Positions 617-62,128 of a stretch of DNA of 64,000 nt are shown here, one piece after another. Location: positions 174,476-238,475 of the IMG/VR virus record IMGVR_UViG_3300043425_001539. The stretch is one strand, 5' to 3'. How positions within the stretch are numbered: position 1 is the stretch's first letter; every line of letters starts with the position of its first letter. The notes below the pieces were generated by a model. It saw nothing but the letters and a program-made list of their open reading frames with translations, was not told the DNA's origin and did not search any database. Both the position numbers and the translations under genes were made by a program.

Positions 617-620
617 TTTT

Positions 621-1397: not shown

Positions 1398-1422
1398 TTA
1401 CTATGTTTTTTTTTATATATAT

Positions 1423-2262: not shown

Positions 2263-2295
2263 TTACTATGTTTTTATTAATTTTAATATTGCACA

Positions 2296-2967: not shown

Positions 2968-3079
2968 TTACTTTGTTTTTTTATACTTCAATTCGGGTAT
3001 TTACAAATATTATATACTACTTTTTCCAAAAGTTCTTAAAATATAAATATTATTTTTACCGATAGTTTTATTTTTTAAA

Positions 3080-3376
3080 TTAATTTGAAGATTCTTCTGT
3101 CTCTTCAACAACTTGTTTTTTTTCTTTTTGGATTTGATTCACAATGTATCCCGCAACCGCAAATTCAGCCCCTGCCCATAGCACTGCATCAGATGCTGTT
3201 AATTTTTCTACATTTTCATAAAAAAACCAAACCATTCCTGATTGGCCAATTATAAATGCAATACTTGATTCTATTCTTTTTTTGGAAAAAAAGGATTCTT
3301 TTGATGTGTATATAAATCCTATTTCTTGTATAAACCATTTGATATTAGTCCAACCAAAAAACCATTTTTTGTTCAT
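3080..3376 (-). CDS. Small membrane protein (holin-like)
   Basis: Two hydrophobic segments after SKKR, charged C-terminal tail. Confidence 0.4.
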   Translation of the reverse strand: MNKKWFFGWTNIKWFIQEIGFIYTSKESFFSKKRIESSIAFIIGQSGMVWFFYENVEKLTASDAVLWAGAEFAVAGYIVNQIQKEKKQVVEETEESSN

Positions 3377-3438
3377 TTTACATAGGCATATTTTTTAATT
3401 ACTTTATATATCCATAAATGTATAATGAACAAAGCATA

Positions 3439-3720
3439 TTATGATTGATACACTTCTTTGTAAATTTCGGCTAATTTAGTATAATCAGCAACTCCATATA
3501 TACGAGTGGCAACGTCGCCGTTTTTAATAAAAACTGTATGTGGAACGCTTTTAATGTTATATTTACGCGCCAGCTCAAAATTTGCATCTTCATCAATATC
3601 CAAATCTTGAATCTCTACAGTATTTTGGTATTCTTCAGAAAATTTTTGAAATGAAGGTGCCATTGCTTTACAAGGTCCGCACCAGCTGGCAGAAAATTTA
3701 ATAATCTTATTCATATTCAT
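3439..3720 (-). CDS. trxA: Thioredoxin
   Basis: FSASWCGPCK active site; IKSVP cis-Pro motif. Confidence 0.92.
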   Translation of the reverse strand: MNMNKIIKFSASWCGPCKAMAPSFQKFSEEYQNTVEIQDLDIDEDANFELARKYNIKSVPHTVFIKNGDVATRIYGVADYTKLAEIYKEVYQS

Positions 3721-3916
3721 TCTTTAAATTTATATAAATCTTAACTTTTTCGTTTTCTTTTGCCGTCATAAACTCGTTATAAATCATTAATGAAAACTCA
3801 TCTTTAAAAATTAATGAATCCGGGTTGACTATGTAATTTTTAAAAAAATTATACTCGCTGTTCTTTGCGCATTGAATAATTTTCTCAGTATCTAAAATTC
3901 TTTTATTAAATCCCAT
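3707..3916 (-). CDS. Hypothetical protein
   Basis: 69-aa ORF in the minus-strand gene run. Confidence 0.55.
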   Translation of the reverse strand: MGFNKRILDTEKIIQCAKNSEYNFFKNYIVNPDSLIFKDEFSLMIYNEFMTAKENEKVKIYINLKNEYE

Positions 3917-4072
3917 AATCTTGTTAGTTAAAAATCTGTTTGTGTGCTTTGTAGACGTTTATCCCAAAAAAAGTTAGCATTCTGTATTTCATAATATATA
4001 GCTTTATTTTAGGCATTAATCTCTGATATACACCAATCCTCAAACAGATTTTTAATTTGTTTATATATCATA

Positions 4073-4342
4073 CTATTCTTGATTCAATTCTTTCATTCCA
4101 CGGTGAATATCCTTGATAGTGTAAATACCTTGTGGACTATTGTCAACAGGATAGACTTTTGTTTTTGGCGGCAAAAATTTTGCGATTGGTGATTTCCAAT
4201 AAAAATTTTTATAGCCTCGGAAAGCAACCTCAACTATTTCCACATCATCATCGTCCAAAATATCTGAAATGTCCGTATCTTCATCAATTTTAATATCTAA
4301 CAATGAATTATCTTTAATAATAACTGCGAATAGTGTACTCAT
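4073..4342 (-). CDS. Hypothetical protein
   Basis: ORF with A-rich leader. Confidence 0.6.
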   Translation of the reverse strand: MSTLFAVIIKDNSLLDIKIDEDTDISDILDDDDVEIVEVAFRGYKNFYWKSPIAKFLPPKTKVYPVDNSPQGIYTIKDIHRGMKELNQE

Positions 4343-4364
4343 ATTTATGTTTTTTAAATGTTAA

Positions 4365-5036
4365 TTAATGTTTTTTAACCGCATCTTTAACTCTGTTAAT
4401 TAAGCTAGAAATTTCTTCGACATTATCCACCGACCAAGCTTCTGTTTTTAGGATAACAAAACCTCCATCAGTACGGTCAAGACCTAAGTCTGAAACAACT
4501 TCTATGGTTAAAGTTTGATCTTCTCCATTAACGCAGTCGCCTTCCTGCCAAAATTCAAATTTTGCTGACATAAGTACTGCTTCTTGTGAATCTAAATCTT
4601 TTTTATTTTCTAAAGTATTATCCATAATTTCTTCAGGTTTCTTTTTCATAATTAAACTATTCTGCCAGCTGCTTGTATCAAATCCTTCACCTAAATAAAT
4701 AAAATGCTTGTCTTTTGATGACCAGTGTCCACACTGAGACTTTGATCTTATTAAAACAGGTTCATTTGCATAAGCAAAAGCTAATCCGTTTTCATTAACC
4801 GCAACATAATTGTATTGGTCAGGTATGTCTTTTTCGGATAGCTGTTTAATCTTTCTTATGACAGAATGTTCCCAATTACTAGAGTCAAAGCCATAATCAA
4901 TAAATTCCATTCCTTCTCCATACCAAATATCTGAAAAATGTCGTGGCACATCTTTAAATCCTTTAGCAAGACCGTCAGGATCAACAGCAGCCCATTCACA
5001 ATTTTCAGGTATGTCCTGTTGTGATAATTTTTTCAT
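4365..5036 (-). CDS. Hypothetical protein with two tandem WAAVDxxG domains (paralog family)
   Basis: Internal duplication KxLSxxDIP..(W/Y)xAV(D/N)xxGLA..G(F)DxSxWxxS(V/L)I; related to ORFs at 35450, 55615 and 57300. Confidence 0.7.
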   Translation of the reverse strand: MKKLSQQDIPENCEWAAVDPDGLAKGFKDVPRHFSDIWYGEGMEFIDYGFDSSNWEHSVIRKIKQLSEKDIPDQYNYVAVNENGLAFAYANEPVLIRSKSQCGHWSSKDKHFIYLGEGFDTSSWQNSLIMKKKPEEIMDNTLENKKDLDSQEAVLMSAKFEFWQEGDCVNGEDQTLTIEVVSDLGLDRTDGGFVILKTEAWSVDNVEEISSLINRVKDAVKKH

Positions 5037-5056
5037 ATAAATAATTATTTAATTTG

Positions 5057-5350
5057 TTAAAGATCCCAACTCAAGATTAAAGTGTGTACAATTTCACCTT
5101 TATTGTTGCGCTCTTCTTTTTCATTTACCGTTATTCCATTATCTTTCAACTTTTGTATCAAAGAATTTTGAAAGCGCTTTTTGTCTGTGATCTGCAAAGA
5201 AGATGCATTCTTTTTAACAGCACTTAAACACAATTCAGCAATCTTTTCATAATTGATATTATTAAAAGATGGATTAGTGCCTTCTTCATTTTGCTTTTTA
5301 ACAAGTTCAGTGCGCGCTTCTTTTAGTTGTTCAAACAGAGTTTTTTCCAT
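5057..5350 (-). CDS. Hypothetical protein
   Basis: 97-aa ORF. Confidence 0.6.
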   Translation of the reverse strand: MEKTLFEQLKEARTELVKKQNEEGTNPSFNNINYEKIAELCLSAVKKNASSLQITDKKRFQNSLIQKLKDNGITVNEKEERNNKGEIVHTLILSWDL

Positions 5351-5353
5351 AAT

Positions 5354-5707
5354 TTATATTTTGTTATTTTTTATAAAATCTTCTAGAATTTCATTTATGC
5401 AAGTACCGCCATCATAATAAACAGCAGTATAAGAAATGCTGCCATCTGCATTGGTGTGAAATACTTGTATGTCTTCATATGCAGCTTTAGAGATTTCTTT
5501 CTCAATCATCCAAATGGTATTATCTGAAAAATTAAAAATATAGTCTTCAAAATCTTCACACTCACTTGAATAATAATCATAATAAGTCACACCAGGAGGC
5601 AACCCTTCAGTTAACGGTCCAATCTGTTCTTTGCACCATTCTTCGATTGTCTTACCTTGTAAATTAATTTGTTTTAATTTTCCAATGTCTAATCTAGTTT
5701 CACTCAT
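5354..5707 (-). CDS. Hypothetical protein
   Basis: 117-aa ORF. Confidence 0.6.
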   Translation of the reverse strand: MSETRLDIGKLKQINLQGKTIEEWCKEQIGPLTEGLPPGVTYYDYYSSECEDFEDYIFNFSDNTIWMIEKEISKAAYEDIQVFHTNADGSISYTAVYYDGGTCINEILEDFIKNNKI

Positions 5708-5765
5708 ATTATTTAAAATTATAAATTCTTCATTGTTTTGTCGATTAATTTTTTACTTATTAAAT

Positions 5766-5796
5766 AAAAAAATCTTGAATTTTACAACTCAAGATT
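5766..5796 (-). terminator. Rho-independent terminator
   Basis: Minus-strand AATCTTGA..TCAAGATT hairpin followed by a T-run, downstream of the 5847-7840 cluster. Confidence 0.55.
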
Positions 5797-5846
5797 ATTT
5801 AACTCCTTATTAAGGATATTTGGTATTTTAGGGGTAGGCGTGTTTT

Positions 5847-6218
5847 TTAGTCTTGAGTAAAATCTTCAATCTTGTCATTGAAAGAAGATTGTTGATATGA
5901 AGATAAATTCTTAATTTCATCGCGTTTTCTTGGAGTTAACTCAATTACAGTGTACCCCATTCGGTAATACTTCTTTTCTGCTGCTGTCAAATTTTTATTA
6001 CGGCGTTTTGCAACTTCTTTTAAAGCTTCTTTGTCATTACCTGTTTCCATAACATCGCCCCAAGTTCCTTTAACAAAAATTGGGTATGTTCTTTTAGTGC
6101 CAATTGAACCTCCGTAATAAACCAAAGCAAATTGGTCAGATAAATTTACTTCATTACCTTCGTTGAGAAATTCTTCCGATTCGTTGATAAAATTATCAAA
6201 GTTTTGAATATGTTTCAT
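5847..6218 (-). CDS. Putative internal head protein (tagged)
   Basis: MKHIQNFDNFINE-S followed by a second EEFLNE site. Confidence 0.65.
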   Translation of the reverse strand: MKHIQNFDNFINESEEFLNEGNEVNLSDQFALVYYGGSIGTKRTYPIFVKGTWGDVMETGNDKEALKEVAKRRNKNLTAAEKKYYRMGYTVIELTPRKRDEIKNLSSYQQSSFNDKIEDFTQD

Positions 6219-6230
6219 ATTTGTGTTTTT

Positions 6231-6845
6231 TTATCCTACAATTGAAAAACTTAATTGATTTTCAGAAACTACCAAATTATAAACTTTATTAAATAGAGTC
6301 TCAACCTCACGTTTAATATCTGATTCAAGCTGTGCCCTACTTTTTTGTGCAAAGTATTGTTTTAGAGATGCTTGTTTAAAAATATTTGCAGTACTCCGGT
6401 AATTGCGTGCGCTTCCTACAAATGAAACATTGACAGTTCTAGTTTTTGCCGAAGGTATATTACTGATTTGCATGTCTTTTCCCAACTTAGATTTCACCAA
6501 ATCATTGTTTGCATTTTGCATCACTGCATCAACAAATAGTTTCAATCCAGCTAAAAAATCGCCCATTTCGTTTGCATTAAAATACGGTCCGCTACCTTGA
6601 GAAACAATTGTGTATTTATCTCCCCAACCGCTTTCTGCTATGTCACTTGTTACTGCATCATACCTACCTGTGCTTATTTTGCTTGGAACGGCCATAACAG
6701 GTACTTTGCCTCCAGCATATTGGATGGTAGCAGAATACCTTAAATCGCCGTATTCACCTACTCTCCATTGTGGCTTTCCTCCTGTCAAAGAAGCCTCGTT
6801 AAGATTTTCATTGATAAAATTATCAAAATTTTGAATGTGTTTCAT
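6231..6845 (-). CDS. Putative internal head protein (tagged)
   Basis: First 13 aa (MKHIQNFDNFINE) identical to the neighbouring ORF; then LNE-A. Confidence 0.65.
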   Translation of the reverse strand: MKHIQNFDNFINENLNEASLTGGKPQWRVGEYGDLRYSATIQYAGGKVPVMAVPSKISTGRYDAVTSDIAESGWGDKYTIVSQGSGPYFNANEMGDFLAGLKLFVDAVMQNANNDLVKSKLGKDMQISNIPSAKTRTVNVSFVGSARNYRSTANIFKQASLKQYFAQKSRAQLESDIKREVETLFNKVYNLVVSENQLSFSIVG

Positions 6846-6859
6846 ACTTGTGTTTTTTT

Positions 6860-7474
6860 TTAATTATAAATTTTTGATTTATCAACAACTGTTGAAATTT
6901 GCCAATCCGATATATCTCCATTAAACTTTGAGTTCTTAAATATACCATTCATAGTCAAAACTCTTCCAACATCCCACTTGCTAACATCGCCATTAAACTT
7001 TGAATCCGCAAACAGCAATCTCATATCTTCAACATTTTTAGTATTCCATTTACTAACATCGCCATTAAACTCAGATCCTTCAAACATACTCTGCATATTT
7101 GCAACATTGCTTACATCCCATTTGCTAATGTCGCCATTAAACTTGGATCCTTCAAACATGCTTTTCATATTAGCAACATTGCCTACATTCCACTTGCTAA
7201 TGTCACCATTAAATTTCGAGAATGCAAACATGCCTTTCATATTGGCTACCTTTCCCACATTCCACTTGCTAATGTCACCATTAAAAGGTGAGTACATAAA
7301 CAAGTCAGACATATCAGTTATTTTGGATACATCTATGTGATTCAAATCAGCATTTGGTCCTTGCTCTGCTATTTCGGTTTTAACCAATTTTAAAAGCTCG
7401 GTTCGATTTGCAGGAACAACAGTTTCTTGTGTTGCTTCATTTATAAACTGTTCAAATGTTTTAACTGTTTTCAT
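6860..7474 (-). CDS. DUF285/BspA-like repeat protein with N-terminal tag
   Basis: FNGDISKWNVG repeats; MKTVKTFEQFINE; GPNADLNHIDVS cap. Confidence 0.85.
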   Translation of the reverse strand: MKTVKTFEQFINEATQETVVPANRTELLKLVKTEIAEQGPNADLNHIDVSKITDMSDLFMYSPFNGDISKWNVGKVANMKGMFAFSKFNGDISKWNVGNVANMKSMFEGSKFNGDISKWDVSNVANMQSMFEGSEFNGDVSKWNTKNVEDMRLLFADSKFNGDVSKWDVGRVLTMNGIFKNSKFNGDISDWQISTVVDKSKIYN

Positions 7475-7477
7475 TGG

Positions 7478-7840
7478 TTATTTATATTTTAAATTTGAAA
7501 TTTCGTCAATTAAACCTCCTAAGTTATAGTCGCTTTGTCTTGAACCGCTAAAAAAATGATCTTGAATTTTTTTATTAGTCGCGGAAGAATATATGTTTTT
7601 GTCCCAATCAATTCGGTCTATTGTCATATAATATCCCACATCTTCACCGCTGCTAAATCCTTTTGCTGTATATTTTTTATTTGAATTAGGCCTATCATCT
7701 GTGATAGCATAAGTTACTTTCAAGTCAAGATTAAGTGGAACAGAAATACCATCAATTGTGTAATTATCCAATTTAATATTTATGGTATTTAATTCTTCAC
7801 TTTCATTTAAAAAAGTTTCAAACGTTTTAATTTTTTTCAT
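7478..7840 (-). CDS. Putative internal head protein (tagged)
   Basis: MKKIKTFETFLNE-S. Confidence 0.65.
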   Translation of the reverse strand: MKKIKTFETFLNESEELNTINIKLDNYTIDGISVPLNLDLKVTYAITDDRPNSNKKYTAKGFSSGEDVGYYMTIDRIDWDKNIYSSATNKKIQDHFFSGSRQSDYNLGGLIDEISNLKYK

Positions 7841-10344: not shown

Positions 10345-10827
10345 TTATCTTGTTAATGATGTATTTGTTAAATTTAATTCTCCTTTCATACCCACGTCGC
10401 GAGATTTCCAGTAATCTTTACCGTATGATATGAATATTTCTTCTCCTGCTTTAATAATTCTTGAAGCTCTGAAAACAATTCTTTCCTTGTTTTCATCGTA
10501 ATGCCATCTAGCGTTAGGCTGGTTTCTGTGATTATATAATGATCCGTTTCCTAGTGCTAGTGCATACTTGTTATCTTCAAGTTTAAACGCATAATCAATT
10601 AGTGAAGTATTAACAATTTCTTCTTTGGCAACAATTAAAACTGGGCATTCTTCAATTACTTCATTATCGGTAATTGGTTCAATAGCCCAAATACCTAATC
10701 CATCTACTTGTGAATTACCAACGGCTACTTTATCCCATTTTTTTACGGTTGGTGTTTTTCTTAAAAGTCCACCTCCATGTACAAAAATATCAGACTCTAA
10801 TATTTCTTCAAAAGATTTAAAATCCAT
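10345..10827 (-). CDS. SET-domain protein-lysine methyltransferase (tagged); likely start at 10827
   Basis: GLGIWA, LYNH..PNA and GEEIFISYG SET motifs; N-terminus MDFKSFEEILE-S. Confidence 0.85.
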   Translation of the reverse strand: MDFKSFEEILESDIFVHGGGLLRKTPTVKKWDKVAVGNSQVDGLGIWAIEPITDNEVIEECPVLIVAKEEIVNTSLIDYAFKLEDNKYALALGNGSLYNHRNQPNARWHYDENKERIVFRASRIIKAGEEIFISYGKDYWKSRDVGMKGELNLTNTSLTR

Positions 10828-14745: not shown

Positions 14746-16590
14746 TTAACGTTTTACGAATCTGTTCAATCCGTTTGCTACATTCTTAACATAATCATTT
14801 GAGTAGCCAAGAGGATTAATGTCATTCTTAGCAGTCTCAATTCTTTTTGATTCATTAAGACTTTCAACAATGGCTTGATCAGTTTTGCCAAGTCCTCTTG
14901 TCTGCCAGAAGTTATTGATTTGGTATTGAGTTTCCAATCTGTAAAGGTTGGCTTGACGTGTGATGCGGTCTTTAACTTCCGTTGATGCTGCTTCCCAAAC
15001 AGGAAGGTATTCAACAGGCATGTTAGTCAACCACTTTTCGTTAGTTTCAACATTTGCAAGTGCAGATTCCCAAACTTTAACAATTCTTTCTTCGCTGAAA
15101 GAAGGATTAGCGTTGAGAGCGTTGGTGACCCTTTGCTTTTCGGTCTCGTTCAAAGAAAAGAATTCATTTCTTTTGTTCTCTCCTAAGAATTTTACGAATG
15201 GATAACGAGCATCATTAGATTTTTCATCTACCTTTTGTTTTTTGATAGAATCCAATACTGCTTCAATTTTATTATCAAGACTAGCGTATCTGTTTACAAT
15301 ATTTTCTTTGATTGAAGAAGATACCATGTCTCTTTCTTTGTTTTCTGATACATCAAATGATTTTCCATCAGCTGAAGGCATCATATTTTCAAACATATGT
15401 TCTGCATATTCAGTAAGATTTTTAAAGTCTTGTTTGGATGCAACATTTTCAGTTATATATTCTGTGTAACGAATTGCATTATCGGTATGTTCAGCAATAT
15501 ATTCTGCATATGAAAGAGTTTGATTCATTTTCTCTGCAAGATAATTGCCATACTTGATGCTCTCTTCCAATTTTTCAGCTACATATTCATTATAGTTGAT
15601 AGAGCTATTTAATTTTTCTGCAAGATAATTGCTATATTCAAATCCTTTGTCCATTTTTTCAGCAATCATTTCTGAGTACTGAATACCACGATCAGATTTT
15701 TCTGCAACATATTCAGAATATTTAATATTTTGGTCCAGTTTTTCACCAAGATATTCTGAATAAGCTAATGCCTGATTTTGTGTTTCAGACAAATAGTTTG
15801 CGTATTTACGGAGATTATGAATTTCTTCTTGAAGCTTGTCAATTTTTTCATCTTTTTCCGTAATGGTGGAAATAGAGTTTAATCTTTCGTTAATCTTAGC
15901 AATTTCGTCTTTAATAATCAACGAATATTTGTTCATTTCCTCAATGGATACAAATTCATTTTGTGACATATTTTCTTTTATTTTTTCCTTTTGAGTATAT
16001 ATCTCATTAGAATCCATGCTTTCAAAAAAAGCTGGGAACTCATTGGTTACATCATAAATTGCAACTTGATCATTATTGTCAAAACCAAGGCTTTCATTAA
16101 TTTTACTTAAGCGTGCATTTTCAAATCCAGGATCAGCAACAAGATCATACGTAAAAATTCTTTTGATCTGAACTTTTTTGTTTTCACCAACCACACCTGC
16201 TGCTCTTGACGAAATGCTAATAGGAACACCCGTGTCAACTAAATTTTTAGCAATTTGTCCACTTGGTGTATCAAGAAGCTTAATTCTTCCTACAATTTGT
16301 CTTTTCTTTGCATCATATTTAATATCTTCAATCAAGTGACTTACTTTTGATAAAGAAATATCAAATTTATCTGGGTGATCCAATTCTCCCAAAAGACGAT
16401 TTTCAGAAATCTTCTTTTTTAAATAATCCAGGTGAGGAAGATATTCTTTTTCTTCATATATACGATTATTATTATTCTCTACTCCAAATTGTGCAAAAAC
16501 ACCTTCAAGAACATAATCGTCATTTTTTTTACTTACTGAAAGATTTTCACCAGATCTTTCAAGTATCATTAAGTATTGCTTGTTACTCAT
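14746..16590 (-). CDS. gp21: Prohead protease (T4 gp21-like) fused to a coiled-coil scaffold/core domain
   Basis: N.N.RIY, LGELDHP, ISSRAAG and TYDLVADPGF protease motifs; YxEYxAEK 14-aa repeats in the C-terminal half; immediately upstream of the MCP. Confidence 0.88.
   Translation of the reverse strand: MSNKQYLMILERSGENLSVSKKNDDYVLEGVFAQFGVENNNNRIYEEKEYLPHLDYLKKKISENRLLGELDHPDKFDISLSKVSHLIEDIKYDAKKRQIVGRIKLLDTPSGQIAKNLVDTGVPISISSRAAGVVGENKKVQIKRIFTYDLVADPGFENARLSKINESLGFDNNDQVAIYDVTNEFPAFFESMDSNEIYTQKEKIKENMSQNEFVSIEEMNKYSLIIKDEIAKINERLNSISTITEKDEKIDKLQEEIHNLRKYANYLSETQNQALAYSEYLGEKLDQNIKYSEYVAEKSDRGIQYSEMIAEKMDKGFEYSNYLAEKLNSSINYNEYVAEKLEESIKYGNYLAEKMNQTLSYAEYIAEHTDNAIRYTEYITENVASKQDFKNLTEYAEHMFENMMPSADGKSFDVSENKERDMVSSSIKENIVNRYASLDNKIEAVLDSIKKQKVDEKSNDARYPFVKFLGENKRNEFFSLNETEKQRVTNALNANPSFSEERIVKVWESALANVETNEKWLTNMPVEYLPVWEAASTEVKDRITRQANLYRLETQYQINNFWQTRGLGKTDQAIVESLNESKRIETAKNDINPLGYSNDYVKNVANGLNRFVKR
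15996..16003 (-). promoter_or_regulatory. Late-promoter motif internal to the protease gene
   Basis: GATATATA followed by an A-rich leader and an in-frame ATG at 15969. Confidence 0.5.
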
Positions 16591-16701: not shown

Positions 16702-17346
16702 TTATTTTCTTAATATTACACGTATAACTACTGGGTTTCTATCCCCGAAAGGTGATAAATTGTTGGATTGTATTACATATTCTGGAACAAAACCTATTTC
16801 TTTAACTCTTCTTAAAAAATCTTCCAAAATATTAAATCTACGGTAATGTCCGTCAAATATCCACTCATTTTTACTTATCATTTGTCCTTGTCCACAAAGT
16901 TCATCATAATTTGATCTTGTCTCAACAAAAAATAACCCTCCATCCTCAATTAAATCGTATATGGATTTAATTGTCCTATATTCACTTACATCATCCACAC
17001 TATGTAAAGAAAATCTTGAATATGCAACATCAAATGTTTCTTTTATTTCAAGACGAGTAAAATCCGCAACAAAGTAATTAACCCGAGTATTTTTTTCTTT
17101 TAATTTATTAATTGAAACTTCTGAAAGATCACACGCGTAAACTTCATTTTTTAAAGCTAAATGTTCAGCGTCTCTGCCATTACCGCATCCAATTTCAAGA
17201 ATTTTGTATTTCTTGTCCTTATTTTCAGAATTTAATATTTGTTGTGTAAAAAGAGCAAAGTTTGATGGATTGGATATTTCAGGAGCGTTTTGCTTTTTTT
17301 CATAATATTCATTCCAATATTTATTATCTTTAATATGTGCTATCAT
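16702..17346 (-). CDS. Class I SAM-dependent methyltransferase
   Basis: ILEIGCGNGRDA; FDVAYSRFSLH. Confidence 0.85.
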   Translation of the reverse strand: MIAHIKDNKYWNEYYEKKQNAPEISNPSNFALFTQQILNSENKDKKYKILEIGCGNGRDAEHLALKNEVYACDLSEVSINKLKEKNTRVNYFVADFTRLEIKETFDVAYSRFSLHSVDDVSEYRTIKSIYDLIEDGGLFFVETRSNYDELCGQGQMISKNEWIFDGHYRRFNILEDFLRRVKEIGFVPEYVIQSNNLSPFGDRNPVVIRVILRK

Positions 17347-18065
17347 TTTCTTATTTCCTTTTCTTTGTTTTTAAAATTATAATAATAATGCCCGTCCAAA
17401 TCTAGCAAACACCAGGGTTTATTTTTTCGATAGTCAAATGTAGGATCAGGAACATTCCACTCTTTTCCGTATAACTGTTCCAAATAACTTTCTACATCAG
17501 AAGGTATTTTAAATTTAACACCTTTGAATTGCATGGTATCAAGTTTTTGTATATACTTACTCTTTGTTCTGATGTACTGTTCGCGCCCGCCATATTTAAA
17601 CATATGATAATCTTCATGCGGAAAATATAAAAATATGTCACATGAAATTTCAATATCTTTAAATTTAACAACTTTATTGTTTTTCTTTAATACAAATTTA
17701 AGATTTCTTGATTTAACAAATTCATCATTTTCCAAATGATTTAATATATCTTCAGTATCATAAAACATTCTGTTTGGTACCGATAGTCTATCTTGTAAAT
17801 CTTGTATCAATTTAGGTGTTATGTCTTCAGCTAAAATACCAACATCACAATCACTGTCGCCGTCAATAAGAGCTTTATCTCGGTAAATACCAAGAAGAGT
17901 TCCACAATCAACCCAAAACTTGGCATTGTGTTTGTTAAAGATGGCAATTAAATCTTGTAAATTTTGAAATTGTAAATCCTTTAATTTTTGATAATCATCT
18001 TTGGACCAGCTATCTTTGCTGATATTTGCCTCGTTTAACCAATCTGTGTAATTTTTAATATTCAT
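17343..18065 (-). CDS. LicD-family nucleotidyl/phosphotransferase (tagged)
   Basis: WVDCGTLLGIYRD..GDSDCDV; IPSD..YL..YG..W..P; N-terminus MNIKNYTDWLNE-A. Confidence 0.82.
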   Translation of the reverse strand: MNIKNYTDWLNEANISKDSWSKDDYQKLKDLQFQNLQDLIAIFNKHNAKFWVDCGTLLGIYRDKALIDGDSDCDVGILAEDITPKLIQDLQDRLSVPNRMFYDTEDILNHLENDEFVKSRNLKFVLKKNNKVVKFKDIEISCDIFLYFPHEDYHMFKYGGREQYIRTKSKYIQKLDTMQFKGVKFKIPSDVESYLEQLYGKEWNVPDPTFDYRKNKPWCLLDLDGHYYYNFKNKEKEIRK

Positions 18066-18139
18066 TTCATACTTAAATATTTGGGTAAAGTATATATCAT
18101 TGCAGAAAAGAACGTTTCTAAGTACTTAGAAAAACTTAC

Positions 18140-18170
18140 AAAAAAAGAGACGCCGTATAAGGCATCTCTT
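18140..18170 (-). terminator. Rho-independent terminator
   Basis: AAGAGATGCC/GGCGTCTCTT stem followed by a T-run. Confidence 0.7.
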
Positions 18171-18194
18171 AAGATTTATTATTCACTATCTATT

Positions 18195-18509
18195 TTACAA
18201 AGAAGTTGACACAACAGACTTCCTATCAGGCATTTGAAGGCTATCCTCGTTTGAATTTGAAAATGATACTTGTTTCAATCCATCCTCTGTGCTAAAATCC
18301 GCAATTTTTTTACCAGCGCTATTTTTAACAATCCCTGACATCATTTTTCCGTCAAAATAGCTAACTTCAATATTTTTCCCATTCTTAAGATAGCTTACAG
18401 TTGTTTTAAGCTTTTCCAATGCGCTTTGAATTTTTTGTACCAATACTGATTCTTGCATATTAGATTCATTTAAAAAGGATTCAAACGTTTGAATGTGCTT
18501 GTTTTTCAT
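18195..18509 (-). CDS. Putative internal head protein (tagged)
   Basis: MKNKHIQTFESFLNE-S. Confidence 0.6.
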   Translation of the reverse strand: MKNKHIQTFESFLNESNMQESVLVQKIQSALEKLKTTVSYLKNGKNIEVSYFDGKMMSGIVKNSAGKKIADFSTEDGLKQVSFSNSNEDSLQMPDRKSVVSTSL

Positions 18510-19098: not shown

Positions 19099-19102
19099 AA
19101 TA

Positions 19103-22128: not shown

Positions 22129-22343
22129 AAGAATAAATTATGACTGTTTAAATTATATTCTTATTTAAAATAAAGTTTTGTCTTTTTTGGAATTTTCTAA
22201 ATATAATTCATATTCTTGATAACTCATCCAAGCAGTTTCTCCAGTTGGAGCAATAACCAAATATCCGTTTTCATATTCATCTATGACCGTTAATTCCCAA
22301 ACTTCACAAAAATGATTATTTTCACAATTAATATTTTCCATAA

Positions 22344-22895
22344 TTAATCCGCTTCTACTTTTGAACCGTCTGGTCTGCTATAAACAATTTTTTCCGTTGC
22401 GGGCTTGATATTTTTAAAATTTTCGAATTTTTTGATATATTTCTCACCCATCCCTTTTTTAAGATAAGCTATCGTTACATGTGGATGATATTCGTCAAAA
22501 TAATTTGTATTTGGAAATTTTGCCAACTTTTGATTTATTTCATCAAGCAACGTTCCTTTGACATCAAATTTAAGTACATCATAATTATCATTATTAAATG
22601 TGGAGATCTTTGTTAATGTTATATCATCACCCAATGCTTCTTTACTAATATTAAGAATTTTAGTTATTTCAGCTGATGATAACTCTTTGTGCTTATCACC
22701 GTCGTGAATCCCATATAGTAGTGTAATATGAGGTTCATTTTCTAAACCGTTTTCATCTAAATCAGCAGCATCAATTTGTGCTTGTATTTCTTTAATCTCA
22801 GGAAGATTTAAAAATAACATTGAGCACCCATATTCATATTTTTCAAATAGAGCAATAAATTCTTCAAATAGCTTAATAAATTTTTTCTGTTGCAT
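22344..22895 (-). CDS. 2H phosphoesterase, Acb1/T4 57B-like (tagged); likely start at 22895
   Basis: Two HxT motifs: PHITLLYG and FDEYHPHVTIAY; N-terminus MQQKKFIKLFEEFI. Confidence 0.8.
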   Translation of the reverse strand: MQQKKFIKLFEEFIALFEKYEYGCSMLFLNLPEIKEIQAQIDAADLDENGLENEPHITLLYGIHDGDKHKELSSAEITKILNISKEALGDDITLTKISTFNNDNYDVLKFDVKGTLLDEINQKLAKFPNTNYFDEYHPHVTIAYLKKGMGEKYIKKFENFKNIKPATEKIVYSRPDGSKVEAD

Positions 22896-22896: not shown

Positions 22897-23241
22897 CTAA
22901 ATAATTTTTTGTAAATGTTGTGGATGACATCTATATTCAATTGCATCAGTTCCTATACGCATATCAGAGTTTTCAATCTTCCAACGAATAGTTACGTCTT
23001 CAAATGCAACAATTGATCCTACTTGTCCATATGAACCTGAGTAAGGATCAACACACCTTACTTTATCTCCGATAGAAAAATTAGCCATTGACTGTGAATC
23101 ATCTAAATATTCATCATAACTATTATTAACAACGTTATGTCCTATGCTACCTACCTGTGCGTTTGGTTTTGCCCAAGCTGGCAAAACACCATTTCCTTGT
23201 ATTTGTTCAAACTCTTCAAAAAGTTTTATGTGTTGTTTCAT
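22897..23241 (-). CDS. Tagged protein with an SH3/KOW-like C-terminal domain
   Basis: MKQHIKLFEEFE; FSIGDKVRC..YGQVGSIV. Confidence 0.55.
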   Translation of the reverse strand: MKQHIKLFEEFEQIQGNGVLPAWAKPNAQVGSIGHNVVNNSYDEYLDDSQSMANFSIGDKVRCVDPYSGSYGQVGSIVAFEDVTIRWKIENSDMRIGTDAIEYRCHPQHLQKII

Positions 23242-23256: not shown

Positions 23257-23727
23257 TTATATCAATTTATTATTTGTATACGAATAGTCTAAATCATCTA
23301 TCTCATCTTTTAACTTTGCTATCTGATTTACTTTACTCGTATCTCCGTTTTCTTGATATTTAATTTGCAATGCCATTAAATCATTAAAGGCATTATGTAT
23401 TTTTACTCTATCTTTTGAGTTAACCGCAGCAATTATTTTATCACCCAATTTTTTGTCTATTTCTGGATGGTCATCAAGAATTTCTTCAATTGATGCTTTT
23501 CTCTTAGAAACTTTTTTATCAATTTTTTCTTCCTCCTCTTCCTTTTTCTTTTTTATTGCCTTCTTTTCCTTTTTAAAAGGATCTTCTTCATCGGATTTTG
23601 ATTTATCCTTTTTATCTGAATCATCAGATTTATCTTTGTTATCAGATTTTTCTTTATCTTTATTTAAAAAAGCCAACGGATCTTCTTCTGTAATAAAATC
23701 TTCAAACAATTTAATGTATTGTTTCAT
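23257..23727 (-). CDS. Tagged acidic/lysine-rich putative internal head protein
   Basis: MKQYIKLFEDFITE-E; GATATATA motif 4 nt upstream. Confidence 0.6.
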   Translation of the reverse strand: MKQYIKLFEDFITEEDPLAFLNKDKEKSDNKDKSDDSDKKDKSKSDEEDPFKKEKKAIKKKKEEEEEKIDKKVSKRKASIEEILDDHPEIDKKLGDKIIAAVNSKDRVKIHNAFNDLMALQIKYQENGDTSKVNQIAKLKDEIDDLDYSYTNNKLI

Positions 23728-23739
23728 AGTTTATATATC

Positions 23740-28488: not shown

Positions 28489-29565
28489 TTATTTTAAGAG
28501 AGATTTGGCTAAAGCAACATACTCTTGAATGACTTTTCTCACCTTTTCAATGGTTTTAATTGCTTCGGGTGATTCAGCTTTATTAAACTTGGATGCATTA
28601 AACATCTTCATCATTTTTTCTTCGTATCTTGCAACAACTGCGCGATAAAATTCATCAGCTGATTTGTATTTAATGGTTGTTCCAAATTCGCCCAACTGTT
28701 CAAGTGTTTCACCTAAACCACGAATACCTTCACAAAGATCTTCAAACTTAGGACTGTTGGCATTCATACCTCGCCAATTTGCTAAGCGGGATGCAGGCTC
28801 ATATTTTTGTGATGTTCCTGATTGTTCCCAAAAGAATTTGCCAATATCACGGATAAAGTTTTGTGCATCCGCAGTTATAAGAATATCATCAACACCCGCT
28901 CTTTTGCTATACGGCGCCATCACTTGTCCGTTAAATTTGGCACGTACACCTCTTGCTTGAATTGAAATGTCAAGAACCTCACCTAATGATGAATAGAGAT
29001 TACCCAAGACAAATCCTTTAACATTTCGTATAGGTGTCATTCGGAAAAGTGTCCATTGAGTGTATTCTTGAGGTGTAACTACCAAATCCACTTGTACGTA
29101 TCCCACACCGCCGTTGCGCATTGCAACCTCCAATATCAATTTAAGTGACGCATCACTTGATACTGCTTGACTTTCCTCCAGGTCAACCTCTGGAATCTTA
29201 GCAGACTTCAACCAATCCATAAATTCAGAATTATACAATTTGGTAGAAGAGATTTCGTTGTTGCGTTCGTTGGCGTCCAATGCAAGAGTGGGATAACCTA
29301 CCAAATAGTCAACATCACCATATGTCTTGTCGGGTTGATTCTCTAAATCTTCGGTCCACCAAGTTCCACTTCCAATCGGGCGAACAAAATCCAGCGGCGG
29401 CAGACCAATACTGGCCAAATGCTGATTGAATCCTTTGGAGATTTTTTCCATAAGTTTAACCACTTCACCAATTACATCAGGTGTAATACTGGTGCCTTGC
29501 GTTTTGGTAGTGGCCCATCCGCCTTCAGCGATAAATTCTTCAAATAGTTTTATGTATAGTTTCAT
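28489..29565 (-). CDS. Pol-beta-fold nucleotidyltransferase (tagged)
   Basis: IGSG..YGDVD..VQVD catalytic pattern; N-terminus MKLYIKLFEEFIAE-G. Confidence 0.65.
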   Translation of the reverse strand: MKLYIKLFEEFIAEGGWATTKTQGTSITPDVIGEVVKLMEKISKGFNQHLASIGLPPLDFVRPIGSGTWWTEDLENQPDKTYGDVDYLVGYPTLALDANERNNEISSTKLYNSEFMDWLKSAKIPEVDLEESQAVSSDASLKLILEVAMRNGGVGYVQVDLVVTPQEYTQWTLFRMTPIRNVKGFVLGNLYSSLGEVLDISIQARGVRAKFNGQVMAPYSKRAGVDDILITADAQNFIRDIGKFFWEQSGTSQKYEPASRLANWRGMNANSPKFEDLCEGIRGLGETLEQLGEFGTTIKYKSADEFYRAVVARYEEKMMKMFNASKFNKAESPEAIKTIEKVRKVIQEYVALAKSLLK

Positions 29566-30515
29566 TGTATTAAATTGTTTTCAAATATAATATCCGCAAT
29601 CTTTCTTGACGCTCGTGTATCACTGGGATAATGAATTGCCGTTATCTCGCGACTGCGTGCAATCTTTTCCCCCAAGGCCTTGAGTTCATCCTGAAGCGCA
29701 GGATATTTTTGCGCATAATATCGACTCATAACCAATCCTGTAAGTGCATGTCCACTGGGATATGAAGCCGTCATTGCATCAGTTTGAATCAAGGGATAAA
29801 TAGGCATGTTATAGCATTTTGCCAATTGGTAAGGACGAGGACGATTAATCACGTCTTTCAGAAAGAACAGCAGACTATCGGTTTGACTGTCAATTCTAAA
29901 AAAGTCTCCCATACTCTCATCATACCCACCGGCTTTCAATAAGTCAATAAATGTTTGTGCCAAATTGCTTACATCATCAACGTAGCGCGCAAAAGTAATC
30001 TCATCAGCCGTCACTTCACTACAGAATTGTAACAATTCTTCCAAATCCGCGCGTGTTTCTCCGCTTGAATTGCGAGGCGCCTCGGCCCGCAACTTGTCAA
30101 CCCAACCCTGCGCAATAAACCAGTTTTTAATCCGGTCGTGGGTATGTTCTGCAATCTCTTGAAACTCTTGAGTCTGATTCCCGTAAACTACTCGATCCAC
30201 ATCCCAATTGTCAACATCAGTCAACTCCGCTTCGGCCAACAAGTCTTTCCGTCCCAATTGCCGATAAACCTCTTTCCGTGTCTTTTCCATTTTTTCTGCG
30301 TATTCCGGGTCTTCATTCCTGTTAAAAACAATTTGTTGCGTTAGACTTCCGCTGATCTTTTTGAGATCACTCTTGCGTGTTTTGATTAGCCAGGCAGCCA
30401 AATCCCGGATACTCAAATCCCGAAATCTTCCCTCTGCCTCAGGCGCATCACTGTCTCTCCATTTGGGACGTTTGGCTTCAGACAACCATTCTTGAAAACT
30501 TTTCATATCAATCAA
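29562..30515 (-). CDS. PAP2/vanadium-haloperoxidase-like phosphatase (tagged)
   Basis: K....RPRP, SYPSGH and SR....HYPSD motifs; N-terminus MKSFQEWLSE-A. Confidence 0.82.
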   Translation of the reverse strand: MIDMKSFQEWLSEAKRPKWRDSDAPEAEGRFRDLSIRDLAAWLIKTRKSDLKKISGSLTQQIVFNRNEDPEYAEKMEKTRKEVYRQLGRKDLLAEAELTDVDNWDVDRVVYGNQTQEFQEIAEHTHDRIKNWFIAQGWVDKLRAEAPRNSSGETRADLEELLQFCSEVTADEITFARYVDDVSNLAQTFIDLLKAGGYDESMGDFFRIDSQTDSLLFFLKDVINRPRPYQLAKCYNMPIYPLIQTDAMTASYPSGHALTGLVMSRYYAQKYPALQDELKALGEKIARSREITAIHYPSDTRASRKIADIIFENNLIQ

Positions 30516-31725: not shown

Positions 31726-31734
31726 AAATAATTG

Positions 31735-60835: not shown

Positions 60836-60883
60836 GGCATTTTAATTTTTAAATTTTATAATAGCATTTATTAAATTGTTTAG

Positions 60884-62111: not shown

Positions 62112-62128
62112 AGTATGTTTTTAAATTG

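What the first reader, a model, noticed from the sequence alone, without database searches (positions are those of the whole stretch)
22344..22895. Acb1-like 2H phosphoesterase carrying the packaging tag
Seen: two HxT motifs (PHITLLY, YHPHVTIAY) and a tag-like N-terminus, in a late-promoter operon with two more tagged genes. Established: T4 Acb1 (57B) is a 2H phosphodiesterase that degrades CBASS cyclic nucleotides and has a similar DYxPHxTxxY second motif. Inference: a pre-packaged anti-CBASS (or anti-type III CRISPR signal) enzyme delivered with the DNA.
Basis: partly seen in the sequence, partly recalled or inferred. Interest (0 to 1): 0.7.

Follow-up and report, generated by a model that had tools for sequence, protein, structure and literature searches.

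The report
Capsid-tagged Acb1-like 2H phosphodiesterase
A freshwater jumbo phage encodes a small phosphodiesterase, most similar in sequence to the phage anti-CBASS enzyme Acb1, with a T4-style capsid-addressing peptide on its front end, so it is probably loaded into the virus head and injected with the DNA; what it cleaves has not been determined.

Summary
The gene is real: window 22344..22895, minus strand, 183 aa. Residues 19-183 are a confidently modelled 2H phosphoesterase with both HxT motifs intact. By sequence its nearest characterised relatives are Acb1 anti-CBASS nucleases. It is nevertheless a separate, very large phage clade, and it lacks Acb1's C-terminal Trp lid and its adenine-reading Glu.

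Residues 1-18 are disordered in the model. They carry a motif that opens at least 26 of about 307 genes in this 238-kb genome, against 1.7 expected by chance. The motif closely matches the T4 capsid targeting sequence MKTYQEFIAE; one homologue begins MKTYNEFINE. It ends in an L-x-E site of the kind T4 prohead protease cuts.

The phage encodes a T4-type S77 prohead protease fused to a scaffold. That scaffold has nine 14-residue repeats of the same motif. The phage also has a gp23-type capsid protein.

Packaging therefore looks likely, at about 0.75. The anti-signalling role is plausible, at about 0.45, but untested. RNA 2',3'-cyclic-phosphate healing is a real rival, because some relatives sit beside RNA ligase and kinase genes or are fused to CCA-adding enzymes. 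The 'late promoter' label is unverified. Packaged 2H domains acting against nucleotide signals were already predicted in 2017, so this is a new variant of a known kind.

The parts
22344..22895 (-). Gene for the 183-aa protein: an 18-residue N-terminal tag followed by a 165-residue 2H phosphoesterase domain (the stop codon is included in these coordinates)
   Evidence: ORF and translation. Pfam PF13563 at 30.6 bits and PF23474 Acb1 at 26.5 bits. AlphaFold model with pLDDT 88.5. 2H structural matches.
22842..22895 (-). Residues 1-18 (MQQKKFIKLFEEFIALFE): the capsid-targeting-like propeptide
   Evidence: pLDDT below 50 for residues 1-18. The same motif opens at least 26 genes in the genome. It matches the T4 CTS MKTYQEFIAE. 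An N-terminal extension ending in [LIVFM]xE is present in 113 of 114 close homologues.
22842..22850 (-). L16-F17-E18, the predicted prohead-protease cleavage site. The mature enzyme would start at K19.
   Evidence: T4 gp21 cuts after L/I-x-E (PMC9026906). In homologues the site aligns with LNE, LLE or INE directly before the folded core. Inference; no cleavage has been observed.
22722..22730 (-). Catalytic motif 1, H56-I-T58 (within H-x-T-L-L-Y)
   Evidence: Invariant in the joint alignment with Acb1.
22473..22481 (-). Catalytic motif 2, H139-V-T141 (within Y-H-P-H-V-T-I-A-Y)
   Evidence: Y-x-P-H-x-T is invariant in the joint alignment with Acb1.
22897..23241 (-). Upstream tagged gene, 114 aa (MKQHIKLFEEF...), with no family match
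23257..23727 (-). First gene of the tagged cluster, 156 aa (MKQYIKLFEDFITEE...), with a Lys/Asp/Glu-rich middle
   Evidence: A 175-nt contig from a metatranscriptome run matches 23508-23682.
23731..23737 (-). TATATAA, a promoter-like motif 10 nt upstream of the first gene of the cluster
   Evidence: About 9-fold enriched upstream of genes across the genome. Position confirmed. Its timing class is not known.
22165..22341 (-). 58-aa ORF two bases downstream of the 2H gene, untagged; possibly the last gene of the same transcription unit
   Evidence: One metagenome variant has a +1 A at 22307 inside it.
14746..16590 (-). T4-type prohead protease (Peptidase_S77) fused to a scaffold-like region with nine 14-residue repeats of Y-x-E-Y-[LIV]-A-E-K
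   Evidence: PF03420 at 47.1 bits. Translation and repeats. The same architecture occurs in huge phage LR745206.
12853..14724 (-). gp23-type major capsid protein, with ILE-EK and LNE-G sites in its N-terminal region
   Evidence: PF07068 at 132.7 bits. BLASTP against T4 gp23 at E 3e-8. Translation.
28489..29565 (-). Tagged 358-aa protein that starts MKLYIKLFEEFIAE; its last five tag residues are identical to T4 CTS residues 6-10
29562..30506 (-). Tagged PAP2-family phosphatase (MKSFQEWLSEAK...)
68..7840 (-). Array that includes eight tagged genes, with window starts 616, 1397, 2262, 2967, 6218, 6845, 7474 and 7840. The four of them scanned with Pfam (starts 616, 1397, 2967, 7474) are DUF285 repeat proteins. 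Untagged genes lie between them.
10345..10827 (-). Tagged SET-domain methyltransferase (MDFKSFEEILE...). The SET-domain homologue in the related contig L005 is tagged too.
17343..18509 (-). Tagged LicD-family protein (start 18065) and a tagged 104-aa protein (start 18509)

Best explanation
The gene encodes a two-part protein.

Part 1, residues 1-18, is a T4-type capsid targeting propeptide. It has two aromatic residues three apart, then an aliphatic residue, then a Glu.

Part 2, residues 19-183, is a 2H phosphoesterase whose closest characterised relatives by sequence are the phage anti-CBASS nucleases Acb1.

Proposed mechanism:
1. The protein is made together with the head proteins.
2. The propeptide docks it onto the scaffold core of the prohead. 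The scaffold is fused to the protease and is built from nine repeats of the same motif.
3. The S77 prohead protease cuts after L16-F17-E18.
4. The mature enzyme stays in the head with the DNA and enters the cell with it.
5. Inside the cell, the HxT/HxT tetrad cleaves a phosphodiester next to a ribose 2'-OH without metal, through a 2',3'-cyclic phosphate.
6. The most likely substrates are cyclic oligonucleotide alarm signals (CBASS or type III CRISPR). The enzyme would then blunt abortive-infection signalling from the first minute of infection.

Shown here: the gene, the fold, the catalytic residues, the modular tag, the protease and scaffold, and the family-wide propeptide.

Inferred: packaging, the cleavage site, injection and the substrate.

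Sub-confidences: 2H enzyme 0.97; tag directs virion incorporation 0.75; substrate is an immune cyclic oligonucleotide 0.45.
For: Enzyme:
- PF13563 scores above its cut-off and PF23474 Acb1 scores 26.5 against 27. 29 of 30 relatives match each of the two models.
- The family profile against all PDB sequences finds only Acb1 chains significantly (9q2g E 2.7e-5, 9q2y E 7.6e-4), with 7t26 as the next 2H hit.
- hhalign against an Acb1 family profile gives 95% probability and E 2.5e-8. Against E. coli ThpR it gives 2% probability.
- Both motifs have the Acb1-type H-x-T-[IL]-x-Y form. The aromatic residues equivalent to Acb1 Y12, W74, F107 and Y110 align.
- AF2 pLDDT is 88.5, and the best structural matches include viral immune-signal phosphodiesterases.

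Tag:
- 26 genes carry it against 1.7 expected.
- The T4 CTS is MKTYQEFIAE. Its targeting residues are 4 and 7, its processing residues are 8 and 10, and gp21 cuts after L/I-x-E.
- Homologues start MKTYNEFINE or ...EFIAE.
- Residues 1-18 are disordered in the model.
- S77 protease, scaffold repeats and gp23 are all present.
- The same tag-plus-scaffold system occurs in related contig L005 and in huge phage LR745206.
- 113 of 114 close homologues and 92 of 99 distant representatives have a short pre-core extension containing [LIVFM]xE.

Delivery theme:
- Relatives are fused to an Alt-like ADP-ribosyltransferase. T4 Alt is a packaged, injected enzyme.

Against the RNA-repair reading for this phage:
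- No RNA ligase, RtcB or polynucleotide kinase was detected in the genome.
Against: - No substrate or virion data exist for this protein or any close relative.
- The protein lacks Acb1's C-terminal Trp147 lid and has Ser at the Glu141 position. Its C-terminus is predicted to be an ordered hairpin.
- It scores similarly on generic 2H and LigT models, and structure does not separate the subfamilies.
- One homologue with a different N-terminal dialect lies beside an RNA ligase and a kinase-HD protein. Others are fused to CCA-adding enzymes.
- The Maribacter phage homologue has no tag, so the enzyme can act without packaging.
- The mature domain contains four more [LI]xE triplets. If exposed, these might be cut.
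- Late expression is not shown.
- The genome record is about 84% complete, so missing partner genes cannot be excluded.
Confidence: 0.5

Rival explanations
1. It is an RNA end-healing enzyme of the LigT/ThpR type. It would open the 2',3'-cyclic phosphate ends left on tRNA or mRNA by host metal-independent ribonucleases, so that the RNA can be repaired. Whether it is also packaged is a separate question.
For: - TIGR02258 (RNA 2',3'-cyclic phosphodiesterase) matches at 32 bits, E 9e-8. PF02834 LigT_PEase matches weakly.
- Homologue P0079 lies one small gene away from a kinase-HD protein and close to an RNA ligase.
- Family members are fused to PolyA_pol / CCA-adding domains (P0310, P0331).
- The core size of 165 aa and the ordered C-terminal hairpin resemble LigT more than Acb1.
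Against: - The TIGR02258 score is far below its cut-off of 65.7.
- No LigT-type chain appears in the PDB profile search at E <= 10, whereas Acb1 chains do.
- hhalign to E. coli ThpR gives 2% probability.
- Motif 2 is followed by Tyr, as in Acb1, not by the Arg of LigT.
- No RNA ligase, RtcB or kinase was found in this genome.
- Iyer et al. 2017 noted that the phage and polyvalent versions of 2H do not associate with RNA ligases.
Confidence: 0.25
2. It is an offensive or processing RNase of the Usb1 type, or a degrader of 2'-5'-linked oligonucleotides. It would be injected to trim or destroy host RNAs rather than to remove immune signals.
For: - Human Usb1 gives the top VIA-align Z score, 13.8, and rotavirus VP3 2',5'-PDE gives 13.2.
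- The homologue in huge phage LR745206 is fused to an RNase_T-family 3'-5' exonuclease.
- Iyer et al. 2017 proposed exactly these two roles for packaged 2H domains.
Against: Z scores of all 2H families lie within 11.5-13.8, so Usb1's rank carries no weight. There is no sequence-level similarity to Usb1 or VP3 in the PDB profile search.
Confidence: 0.1
3. The shared N-terminal motif is not a signal for packaging inside the head. It could anchor proteins to the outside of the capsid (several tagged proteins are DUF285 repeat proteins). It could be a docking peptide for another phage machine. Or it could be a leader removed by the protease without the cargo being retained. In each case the 2H enzyme would act only after new synthesis in the infected cell.
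For: - No virion data exist.
- Four of the tagged proteins scanned with Pfam are DUF285 repeat proteins. I read these as more typical of surface proteins; that reading is my own inference, not a tool result.
- A relative, Tenacibaculum phage pT24, belongs to the same capsid lineage. Its description as having head appendages comes from my recollection of the literature and was not checked here.
- The Molly homologue works without a tag.
Against: - Up to 8 of 10 residues are identical to the experimentally defined T4 internal-protein CTS.
- The motif is repeated nine times in the scaffold fused to the prohead protease.
- The tagged cargo is mostly enzymes: SET, PAP2, cytidylyltransferase-like, LicD and 2H. 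Their substrates are intracellular.
- T4 precedent shows that any protein carrying the CTS is retained in heads and injected.
Confidence: 0.2

Closest known systems
Acb1 anti-CBASS nuclease (T4 gp57B; Erwinia phage FBB1, PDB 7T26/7T27; Burkholderia phage BCSR5 phosphodiesterase, PDB 9Q2G/9Q2Y)
   Same: - 2H fold with an HxT/HxT tetrad, and the H-x-T-[IL]-x-Y form of both motifs.
- The F-P-D-Y-x-P-H-[IV]-T signature before motif 2.
- Aromatic residues aligning with Acb1 Y12, W74, F107 and Y110.
- It is the only family found by the profile search of PDB sequences.
- Phage-encoded. In T4 the acb1 gene lies directly beside an internal-protein gene, ipI.
   Different: - The core is 165 aa against about 140 aa, with an extra helix at residues 74-89.
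- It ends before the Trp147 lid and has Ser at the Glu141 position.
- It falls just under the Pfam gathering score.
- It carries an 18-residue cleavable-looking propeptide. Canonical Acb1 has only 8-9 residues before the core and no L-x-E site.
- Its substrate range is unknown.
T4 internal proteins IPI, IPII, IPIII and Alt (capsid targeting sequence, gp21 processing)
   Same: - An N-terminal peptide with aromatics three apart, followed by an aliphatic-x-Glu site (T4: MKTYQEFIAE and MKTFKEF...ITE).
- A phage-encoded S77 protease, a scaffold core and a gp23-type shell.
- A diverse, non-homologous cargo recognised only by the tag.
   Different: - The known T4 internal proteins are small inhibitors of type IV restriction enzymes, plus one ADP-ribosyltransferase. 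Here the cargo is an Acb1-like phosphodiesterase, one of about 30 tagged proteins, roughly a tenth of the gene set.
- The tag is longer and sits 5-9 residues from the Met.
- The protease and scaffold are one polypeptide.
LigT/ThpR RNA 2',3'-cyclic phosphodiesterase (E. coli ThpR, PDB 5LDM; TIGR02258)
   Same: Same superfamily and size class, with Z about 12. It gives a weak HMM match at 32 bits.
   Different: It scores far below the family cut-off. Motif 2 is followed by Tyr, not Arg. hhalign probability is 2%. It has no propeptide and is a cellular housekeeping enzyme.
2H domains of phage polyvalent proteins (Iyer, Burroughs, Anand, de Souza, Aravind 2017, PMC5512222)
   Same: These 2H domains were predicted to be packaged in the head and injected. 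They were proposed to act as RNases or to degrade nucleotide signals of host defence. Members of the present family do occur in such multidomain proteins.
   Different: There, delivery is inferred from fusion to MuF, portal or other effector domains. Here a single-domain enzyme is addressed by a short T4-type propeptide.
Eukaryotic-virus 2H immune-signal phosphodiesterases (penguinpox cGAMP PDE 9BKQ; rotavirus VP3 C-terminal domain; coronavirus ns2)
   Same: They give the top Foldseek matches. They are viral 2H enzymes that destroy host nucleotide second messengers.
   Different: Sequence identity is only 14-17%. The hosts and signals differ, and these enzymes are not known to be addressed by a propeptide.

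Membership tests
2H phosphoesterase superfamily | Two H-x-T/S motifs on the two lobes | tested here: met
   H56-I-T58 and H139-V-T141. Both are invariant across 30 relatives and in the joint alignment with Acb1.
2H phosphoesterase superfamily | Bilobed alpha+beta fold with a central cleft | tested here: met
   AF2 pLDDT 88.5. Foldseek gives 32 matches at E <= 1e-3, and every one listed is a 2H protein. VIA-align Z is 11.5-13.8 over residues 19-183.
Acb1 (Pfam PF23474) | Score at or above Pfam's gathering threshold (27 bits) | tested here: not met
   26.5 bits for this protein. 29 of 30 relatives match at E <= 1e-3, best 5e-9, and some relatives are above the cut-off. The miss is marginal.
Acb1 (Pfam PF23474) | Catalytic tetrad in the form H-x-T-[IL]-x-Y, preceded by [FY]-x-D/E-Y-x-P in motif 2 | tested here: met
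Acb1 (Pfam PF23474) | Base-stacking aromatics Y12, W74 and F107 (Hobbs et al. 2022) | tested here: met
   In alignment A3 these correspond to F28, F100 and F133 here. F100 is invariant in the family, and the others are mostly aromatic. This rests on alignment only, not on a bound-ligand model.
Acb1 (Pfam PF23474) | C-terminal lid that closes over the ligand, with W147 | tested here: not met
   The protein ends at the position aligned with about residue 144 of T4 Acb1, with no Trp. Its C-terminus is predicted as an ordered beta hairpin with pLDDT above 90.
Acb1 (Pfam PF23474) | Glu141 reading adenine N6 | tested here: not met
   The aligned residue is Ser178. The position varies in the family (S, E, T). 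hhalign does not extend into this region, so the alignment there is soft.
Acb1 (Pfam PF23474) | Cleaves 3'3'-cGAMP, cUA and cA3 3' of adenosine; rescues phage from CBASS | not testable with these tools
   The ligand co-folding job was not run by the tool.
LigT/ThpR (TIGR02258) | Score at or above the curated cut-off of 65.7 bits; H-x-T-L-x-R in motif 2 | tested here: not met
   32.2 bits. Tyr144 sits where LigT has Arg. hhalign probability is 2%.
T4-type capsid-targeted internal proteins | N-terminal peptide with the CTS pattern (aromatic, x, x, aromatic, aliphatic, x, Glu) ahead of the folded domain | tested here: met
   F10-E-E-F13-I14 ... L16-F17-E18. The segment is disordered in the model. 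Homologues have up to 8 of 10 residues identical to MKTYQEFIAE.
T4-type capsid-targeted internal proteins | The same phage encodes an S77 prohead protease, a scaffold core and a gp23-type shell | tested here: met
T4-type capsid-targeted internal proteins | The tag is shared by unrelated proteins of the same phage | tested here: met
   26 strict matches against 1.7 expected. The cargo includes SET, PAP2, LicD, cytidylyltransferase-like, Hint and DUF285 proteins.
T4-type capsid-targeted internal proteins | The protein is present in virions, is cut after the Glu, and is ejected into the host | not testable with these tools
   The phage is uncultured and comes from freshwater metagenomes. I found no proteome for any relative that carries the gene.
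T4-type capsid-targeted internal proteins | Expressed late, together with the head proteins | tested here: inconclusive
   A TATATAA motif lies upstream and is enriched before tagged genes. Its timing class is unknown, and the T4 late consensus is not enriched.

The most novel reading that the evidence does not exclude
A whole lineage of jumbo and huge phages may use a T4-type capsid targeting propeptide to pre-load roughly a tenth of its proteome into the head as an injected enzyme arsenal. This lineage is related by its capsid protein to the Lak phages, Tenacibaculum phage pT24 and Sphingomonas phage PAU. The Acb1-like phosphodiesterase would be a recurrent, near-universal item of that cargo, so cyclic-oligonucleotide immunity would be disarmed before any phage gene is expressed.

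A corollary concerns canonical T4 Acb1. It sits beside ipI, begins with aromatics at the two CTS targeting positions (F4 and F7), and has no processing site. It may itself be a virion-delivered protein, which has not been noticed.
Probability: 0.3. Interest if true: 0.8.

Novelty: new variant of a known kind. Interest (0 to 1): 0.62.

Why it matters
Known anti-CBASS and anti-cOA enzymes are thought to act after they are made in the infected cell. An enzyme that arrives with the DNA would change the timing of the contest between phage and signalling-based immunity. It would also add an enzymatic counter-defence to the short list of injected phage proteins whose function is known; in T4 these are inhibitors of type IV restriction plus Alt.

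The tag is short, recognisable and nearly identical to the T4 CTS. It therefore gives a sequence-only way to list the injected proteome of uncultured jumbo and huge phages, and the idea can be tested directly in T4 with reporter fusions.

The family is very large, with about 4,500 clusters at 50% identity, so a measured substrate would annotate thousands of phage genes.

Tried and rejected
1. T4 late promoter TATAAATA: not enriched and absent from the locus. The sigma-70 and terminator scans gave no more matches than shuffled sequence.

2. Structure as a discriminator: Foldseek and VIA-align put all 2H subfamilies within Z 11.5-13.8. The fold confirms the superfamily only.

3. Ligand co-folding with 3'3'-cGAMP: the tool did not fold it, so it gives no evidence either way.

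4. Single-sequence search of PDB sequences: no hit. Only the family profile reached Acb1.

5. RNA-repair partners in the genome: none found for PF09414, PF09511, PF01139 or PF13671. The PF09511 control rang nowhere, so that result is void. The record is also only 84% complete.

6. A second 2H or Acb1 gene in the genome: none.

7. Names from public sources for relatives: only '2'-5' RNA ligase' or hypothetical.

8. Transcription evidence: one poly(A) metatranscriptome holds a 175-nt piece of the neighbouring gene, which is uninformative.

9. Literature: no paper in the searchable library links Acb1 or a 2H enzyme with a capsid targeting sequence. The nearest prior idea is the packaged 2H domain of polyvalent proteins.

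10. The longer ORF start at 22946: rejected. It overlaps the upstream gene, and homologues begin at the tag.
Full report
**Setting.** The window is the last 64 kb of a 238,475-bp IMG/VR virus record with 32% G+C, and almost all genes lie on the minus strand. CheckV estimates the record to be 84% complete. Near-identical DNA occurs in freshwater, subsurface and wastewater metagenomes from separate studies. The major capsid protein is of the T4 gp23 type: PF07068 at 132.7 bits, and BLASTP against T4 gp23 at E 3e-8. Its closest relatives are in the Lak phages of Prevotella, several 460-735-kb 'huge phages', Tenacibaculum phage pT24 and Sphingomonas phage PAU. This is therefore an uncultured jumbo phage of that lineage. 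Most cultured or assigned relatives infect Bacteroidota.

**The observation.** The ORF at 22344..22895 (minus strand) encodes 183 residues. Its ATG lies one base after the stop of the upstream gene. A longer ORF from 22946 overlaps that gene and is not supported by homologues, which begin at the tag. The two genes upstream (22897..23241 and 23257..23727) begin with the same peptide. The one element I could not confirm is the 'late promoter'.
- The T4 late consensus TATAAATA is at chance level and is absent here.
- A related AT-rich motif, TATATAA, is about 9-fold enriched upstream of genes.
- That motif lies 10 nt before the first gene of the cluster, at 23731-23737, and precedes many other tagged genes.
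- Nothing shows when it fires.

**The enzyme domain.** Pfam places the protein in the 2H superfamily: PF13563 at 30.6 bits against a cut-off of 27, and PF23474 Acb1 at 26.5 against 27. PHROGs gives phrog_755. An AlphaFold model built on 30 relatives has mean pLDDT 88.5. Residues 19-183 are confident and residues 1-18 are below 50. Foldseek and VIA-align return only 2H phosphoesterases at the top:
- penguinpox cGAMP phosphodiesterase
- rotavirus VP3 2',5'-phosphodiesterase
- the Burkholderia phage BCSR5 phosphodiesterase, deposited as Acb1
- Usb1, plant CPDase and LigT
- FBB1 Acb1

All lie within Z 11.5-13.8, so the fold proves the superfamily and nothing finer.

**Which 2H family?** Sequence is more discriminating than structure here.
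- A profile of the family searched against all PDB chain sequences finds two significant hits, both Acb1: 9q2g at E 2.7e-5 and 9q2y at 7.6e-4. FBB1 Acb1 comes next, and no LigT, YjcG, CPDase or Usb1 chain appears at E <= 10.
- Profile-profile comparison with an alignment of 22 canonical Acb1 proteins gives 95% probability and E 2.5e-8, spanning both motifs.
- The same profile against E. coli ThpR gives 2% probability.
- Shared signatures are the H-x-T-[IL]-x-Y form of both motifs and the F-P-D-Y-x-P-H-[IV]-T block. Aromatic residues also align with Acb1's base-stacking Y12, W74 and F107.

There are clear differences from Acb1 as well.
- NCBIfam's LigT model also matches, at 32 bits, far under its cut-off of 65.7.
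- PF13563 and PF23474 each match 29 of 30 relatives.
- The core is about 25 residues longer than Acb1, with an extra helix at residues 74-89.
- In a joint alignment the protein stops before Acb1's Trp147 lid and has Ser where Acb1 has the adenine-reading Glu141.

I therefore file it as an Acb1-like sister clade. It is not Acb1 proper, and no substrate specificity can be carried over.

**Size and shape of the family.** The word-indexed search found 274 relatives at 90% clustering. An exhaustive HMM search of 1.84 billion representatives found 5,774 at E <= 1e-3 and 4,534 at E <= 1e-10. Most are stand-alone proteins of 170-195 residues. Some are fused to other effector-like domains:
- an Alt-like ADP-ribosyltransferase (P0217)
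- PolyA_pol / CCA-adding domains (P0310, P0331)
- a type IB topoisomerase (P0351)
- an RNase_T exonuclease, in huge phage LR745206

These architectures match the 'polyvalent proteins' of Iyer et al. 2017. Those authors predicted that such proteins are packaged and injected. They also proposed that the 2H domains act as RNases or degrade nucleotide signals of host defence.

**The tag.** The first 18 residues are MQQKKFIKLFEEFIALFE. The strict pattern of aromatic, two residues, aromatic, aliphatic, one residue, Glu starts within the first 15 residues of 26 of 307 called genes, against 1.7 expected. Looser variants bring the set to about 30, including this gene.

The cargo proteins are unrelated to one another:
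- DUF285 repeat proteins
- a SET-domain methyltransferase
- a PAP2 phosphatase
- a LicD protein
- a cytidylyltransferase-like protein
- a Hint-domain protein
- an AAA/HTH protein
- many proteins with no family match

The T4 capsid targeting sequence is MKTYQEFIAE. In T4, positions 4 and 7 direct targeting, and positions 8 and 10 direct processing by gp21, which cuts after L/I-x-E. Any protein that carries the peptide is packaged and injected. T4 IPI begins MKTFKEF and is cut after ITE. One gene in the window begins MKLYIKLFEEFIAE. A homologue of the 2H protein begins MKTYNEFINE, which is 8 of 10 identical to T4.

**The machinery for the tag is present.** Window ORF 14746..16590 is a Peptidase_S77 (T4 gp21 family) protease at 47.1 bits. 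It is fused to a long helical region with nine 14-residue repeats of Y-x-E-Y-[LIV]-A-E-K. The tag motif is thus written nine times into the scaffold. This suggests that the tag co-assembles with the scaffold repeats and is released by the same cuts; that step is inference. The capsid protein has ILE-EK and LNE-G in its N-terminal region.

The same arrangement recurs in two other places.
- In related contig L005, S77 and gp23 lie about 8 kb from the 2H gene, and neighbouring genes are tagged, including a SET protein.
- In the 635-kb phage LR745206, every neighbour of the 2H gene starts MKHLKKFNE..., and the protease-scaffold has about 13 YSEYLAEN repeats.

Within the 2H family, 113 of 114 close homologues and 92 of 99 distant representatives have a short pre-core extension containing [LIVFM]-x-E. 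A propeptide is thus the rule in this family. The Maribacter phage Molly homologue is an exception, and canonical Acb1 also lacks the site.

**Mechanism proposed.**
1. The protein is made with the head proteins.
2. Its tag docks it on the scaffold core.
3. The protease cuts after L16-F17-E18.
4. The 165-residue enzyme stays with the DNA and is ejected into the host.
5. The two His-Thr pairs catalyse metal-independent attack of a ribose 2'-OH on the adjacent phosphate.

Steps 1-4 rest on homology with T4 and are not observed here. The substrate is the weakest link. I favour cyclic oligonucleotide signals for three reasons: the sequence kinship with Acb1, the absence of RNA ligase, RtcB or polynucleotide kinase in this genome (the PF09511 control failed), and the company of other likely host-manipulating enzymes in the tagged set.

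**Rivals.**
- RNA end-healing is supported by homologue P0079. It has a different N-terminal dialect and lies next to an RNA ligase and a kinase-HD protein. The CCA-adding fusions point the same way.
- An RNase or 2'-5' phosphodiesterase role was proposed by Iyer et al. 2017. It is compatible with the exonuclease fusion.
- The tag could mean virion association of another kind, for example on the outside of the capsid, or it could be a leader without retention of the cargo.

None of these is excluded.

**Novelty.** The parts are known: Acb1-type 2H enzymes, T4 capsid targeting, and the predicted packaging of 2H domains in polyvalent proteins. I did not find their combination described. That combination is a stand-alone Acb1-like enzyme addressed by a T4-type propeptide, as a family-wide trait and as one item of a roughly 30-protein tagged cargo. 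I rate it a new variant of a known kind, with interest 0.62. Everything that would make it important, namely presence in virions, cleavage, substrate and effect on immunity, can be tested with ordinary experiments, several of them in T4.

Noticed in passing
L004:3592-4411 (T4 NC_000866 73591-74410): T4 acb1 (57B) lies directly upstream of ipI, the gene for internal protein I. T4 Acb1 begins MMEFKDF, with aromatics at positions 4 and 7. These are the two targeting positions of the T4 CTS (IPIII MKTYQEF, IPI MKTFKEF). It has no I-x-E processing site. The crystallised FBB1 Acb1 chain lacks residues 1-9. Canonical Acb1 may carry a vestigial or uncleaved capsid tag.
   Followed up: partly
window 14746-16590 (-): The prohead protease (S77) and the scaffold are one 614-aa polypeptide. 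The scaffold part has nine 14-residue repeats of Y-x-E-Y-[LIV]-A-E-K at residues 263-381, the same motif as the cargo tag. The 707-aa homologue in LR745206 (L016:1780-3903) has about 13 such repeats.
   Followed up: partly
whole genome G000; window gene starts 616, 1397, 2262, 2967, 6218, 6845, 7474, 7840, 10827, 18065, 18509, 22895, 23241, 23727, 24639, 29565, 30506: About 30 of about 307 genes start with the tag, and they are clustered in arrays. A second large array lies at genome 63-78 kb (L007, L008). It includes a tagged cytidylyltransferase-like protein, a tagged 579-aa Hint-domain protein and a tagged AAA/HTH protein.
   Followed up: partly
L015:3001-4317 (LR745206, 635-kb huge phage): The homologue there is a three-part protein: tag, 2H domain and RNase_T-family 3'-5' exonuclease. 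All flanking genes begin MKHLKKFNE or similar.
   Followed up: partly
L006:6387-10564: A homologue whose N-terminus reads MNIRYAVRKALLTEAEKK has no aromatic pair but still has an L-x-E site. It lies next to an RNA ligase (PF09414) and a kinase-HD protein, with NAD-salvage genes (NAMPT, NUDIX) nearby. This looks like an RNA-repair or counter-defence island.
   Followed up: no
L012:6001-6606 (Maribacter phage Molly_1): The Molly 2H gene starts without a tag (MSDSKNNRRFGC). A tag-like peptide, KTYEEFTKVVE, lies upstream in the same frame, at the end of the preceding annotated ORF, separated by one stop codon. It could be a decayed tag, a mis-annotation or read-through; I could not tell which.
   Followed up: no
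window 19098-54929, upstream of gene starts 19098, 32645, 34975, 35346, 37837, 38192, 41864, 42685, 52223, 54460 and 54929: A conserved motif of about 30 nt, TTGTATATTTGTATATAA[AT]TTAAAAACAAC, precedes at least 11 genes, most of them under 180 aa. Many lie in the G+C-richer stretch at 28-48 kb (36-41% against 30-33% elsewhere). It is probably a distinct promoter class, possibly early.
   Followed up: no
window 21592-22128 (-) and 18568-19101 (-): Close to the tagged cluster are a pyrimidine-dimer DNA glycosylase (DenV-like, PF03013) and a very small Pol-beta-like protein (thumb and palm only, about 177 aa).
   Followed up: no
window 24688-28044 (-): An 1118-aa protein combines GT4-type and GT9 (heptosyltransferase-like) glycosyltransferase domains. 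LicD and methyltransferase genes lie nearby at 16702-18065. This suggests glycan or phosphocholine modification functions.
   Followed up: no
window 22307: One independent freshwater metagenome (run X3) carries an extra A after 22307, inside the 58-aa ORF 22165..22341 just downstream of the 2H gene. No difference in the 2H gene itself was listed for that run.
   Followed up: no
window 31653-31819, 38444-38516, 60883-60965, 62128-62201: Five tRNA genes on the minus strand: Phe-GAA, Ser-TGA, Lys-TTT, Leu-TAA and Arg-TCT.
   Followed up: no
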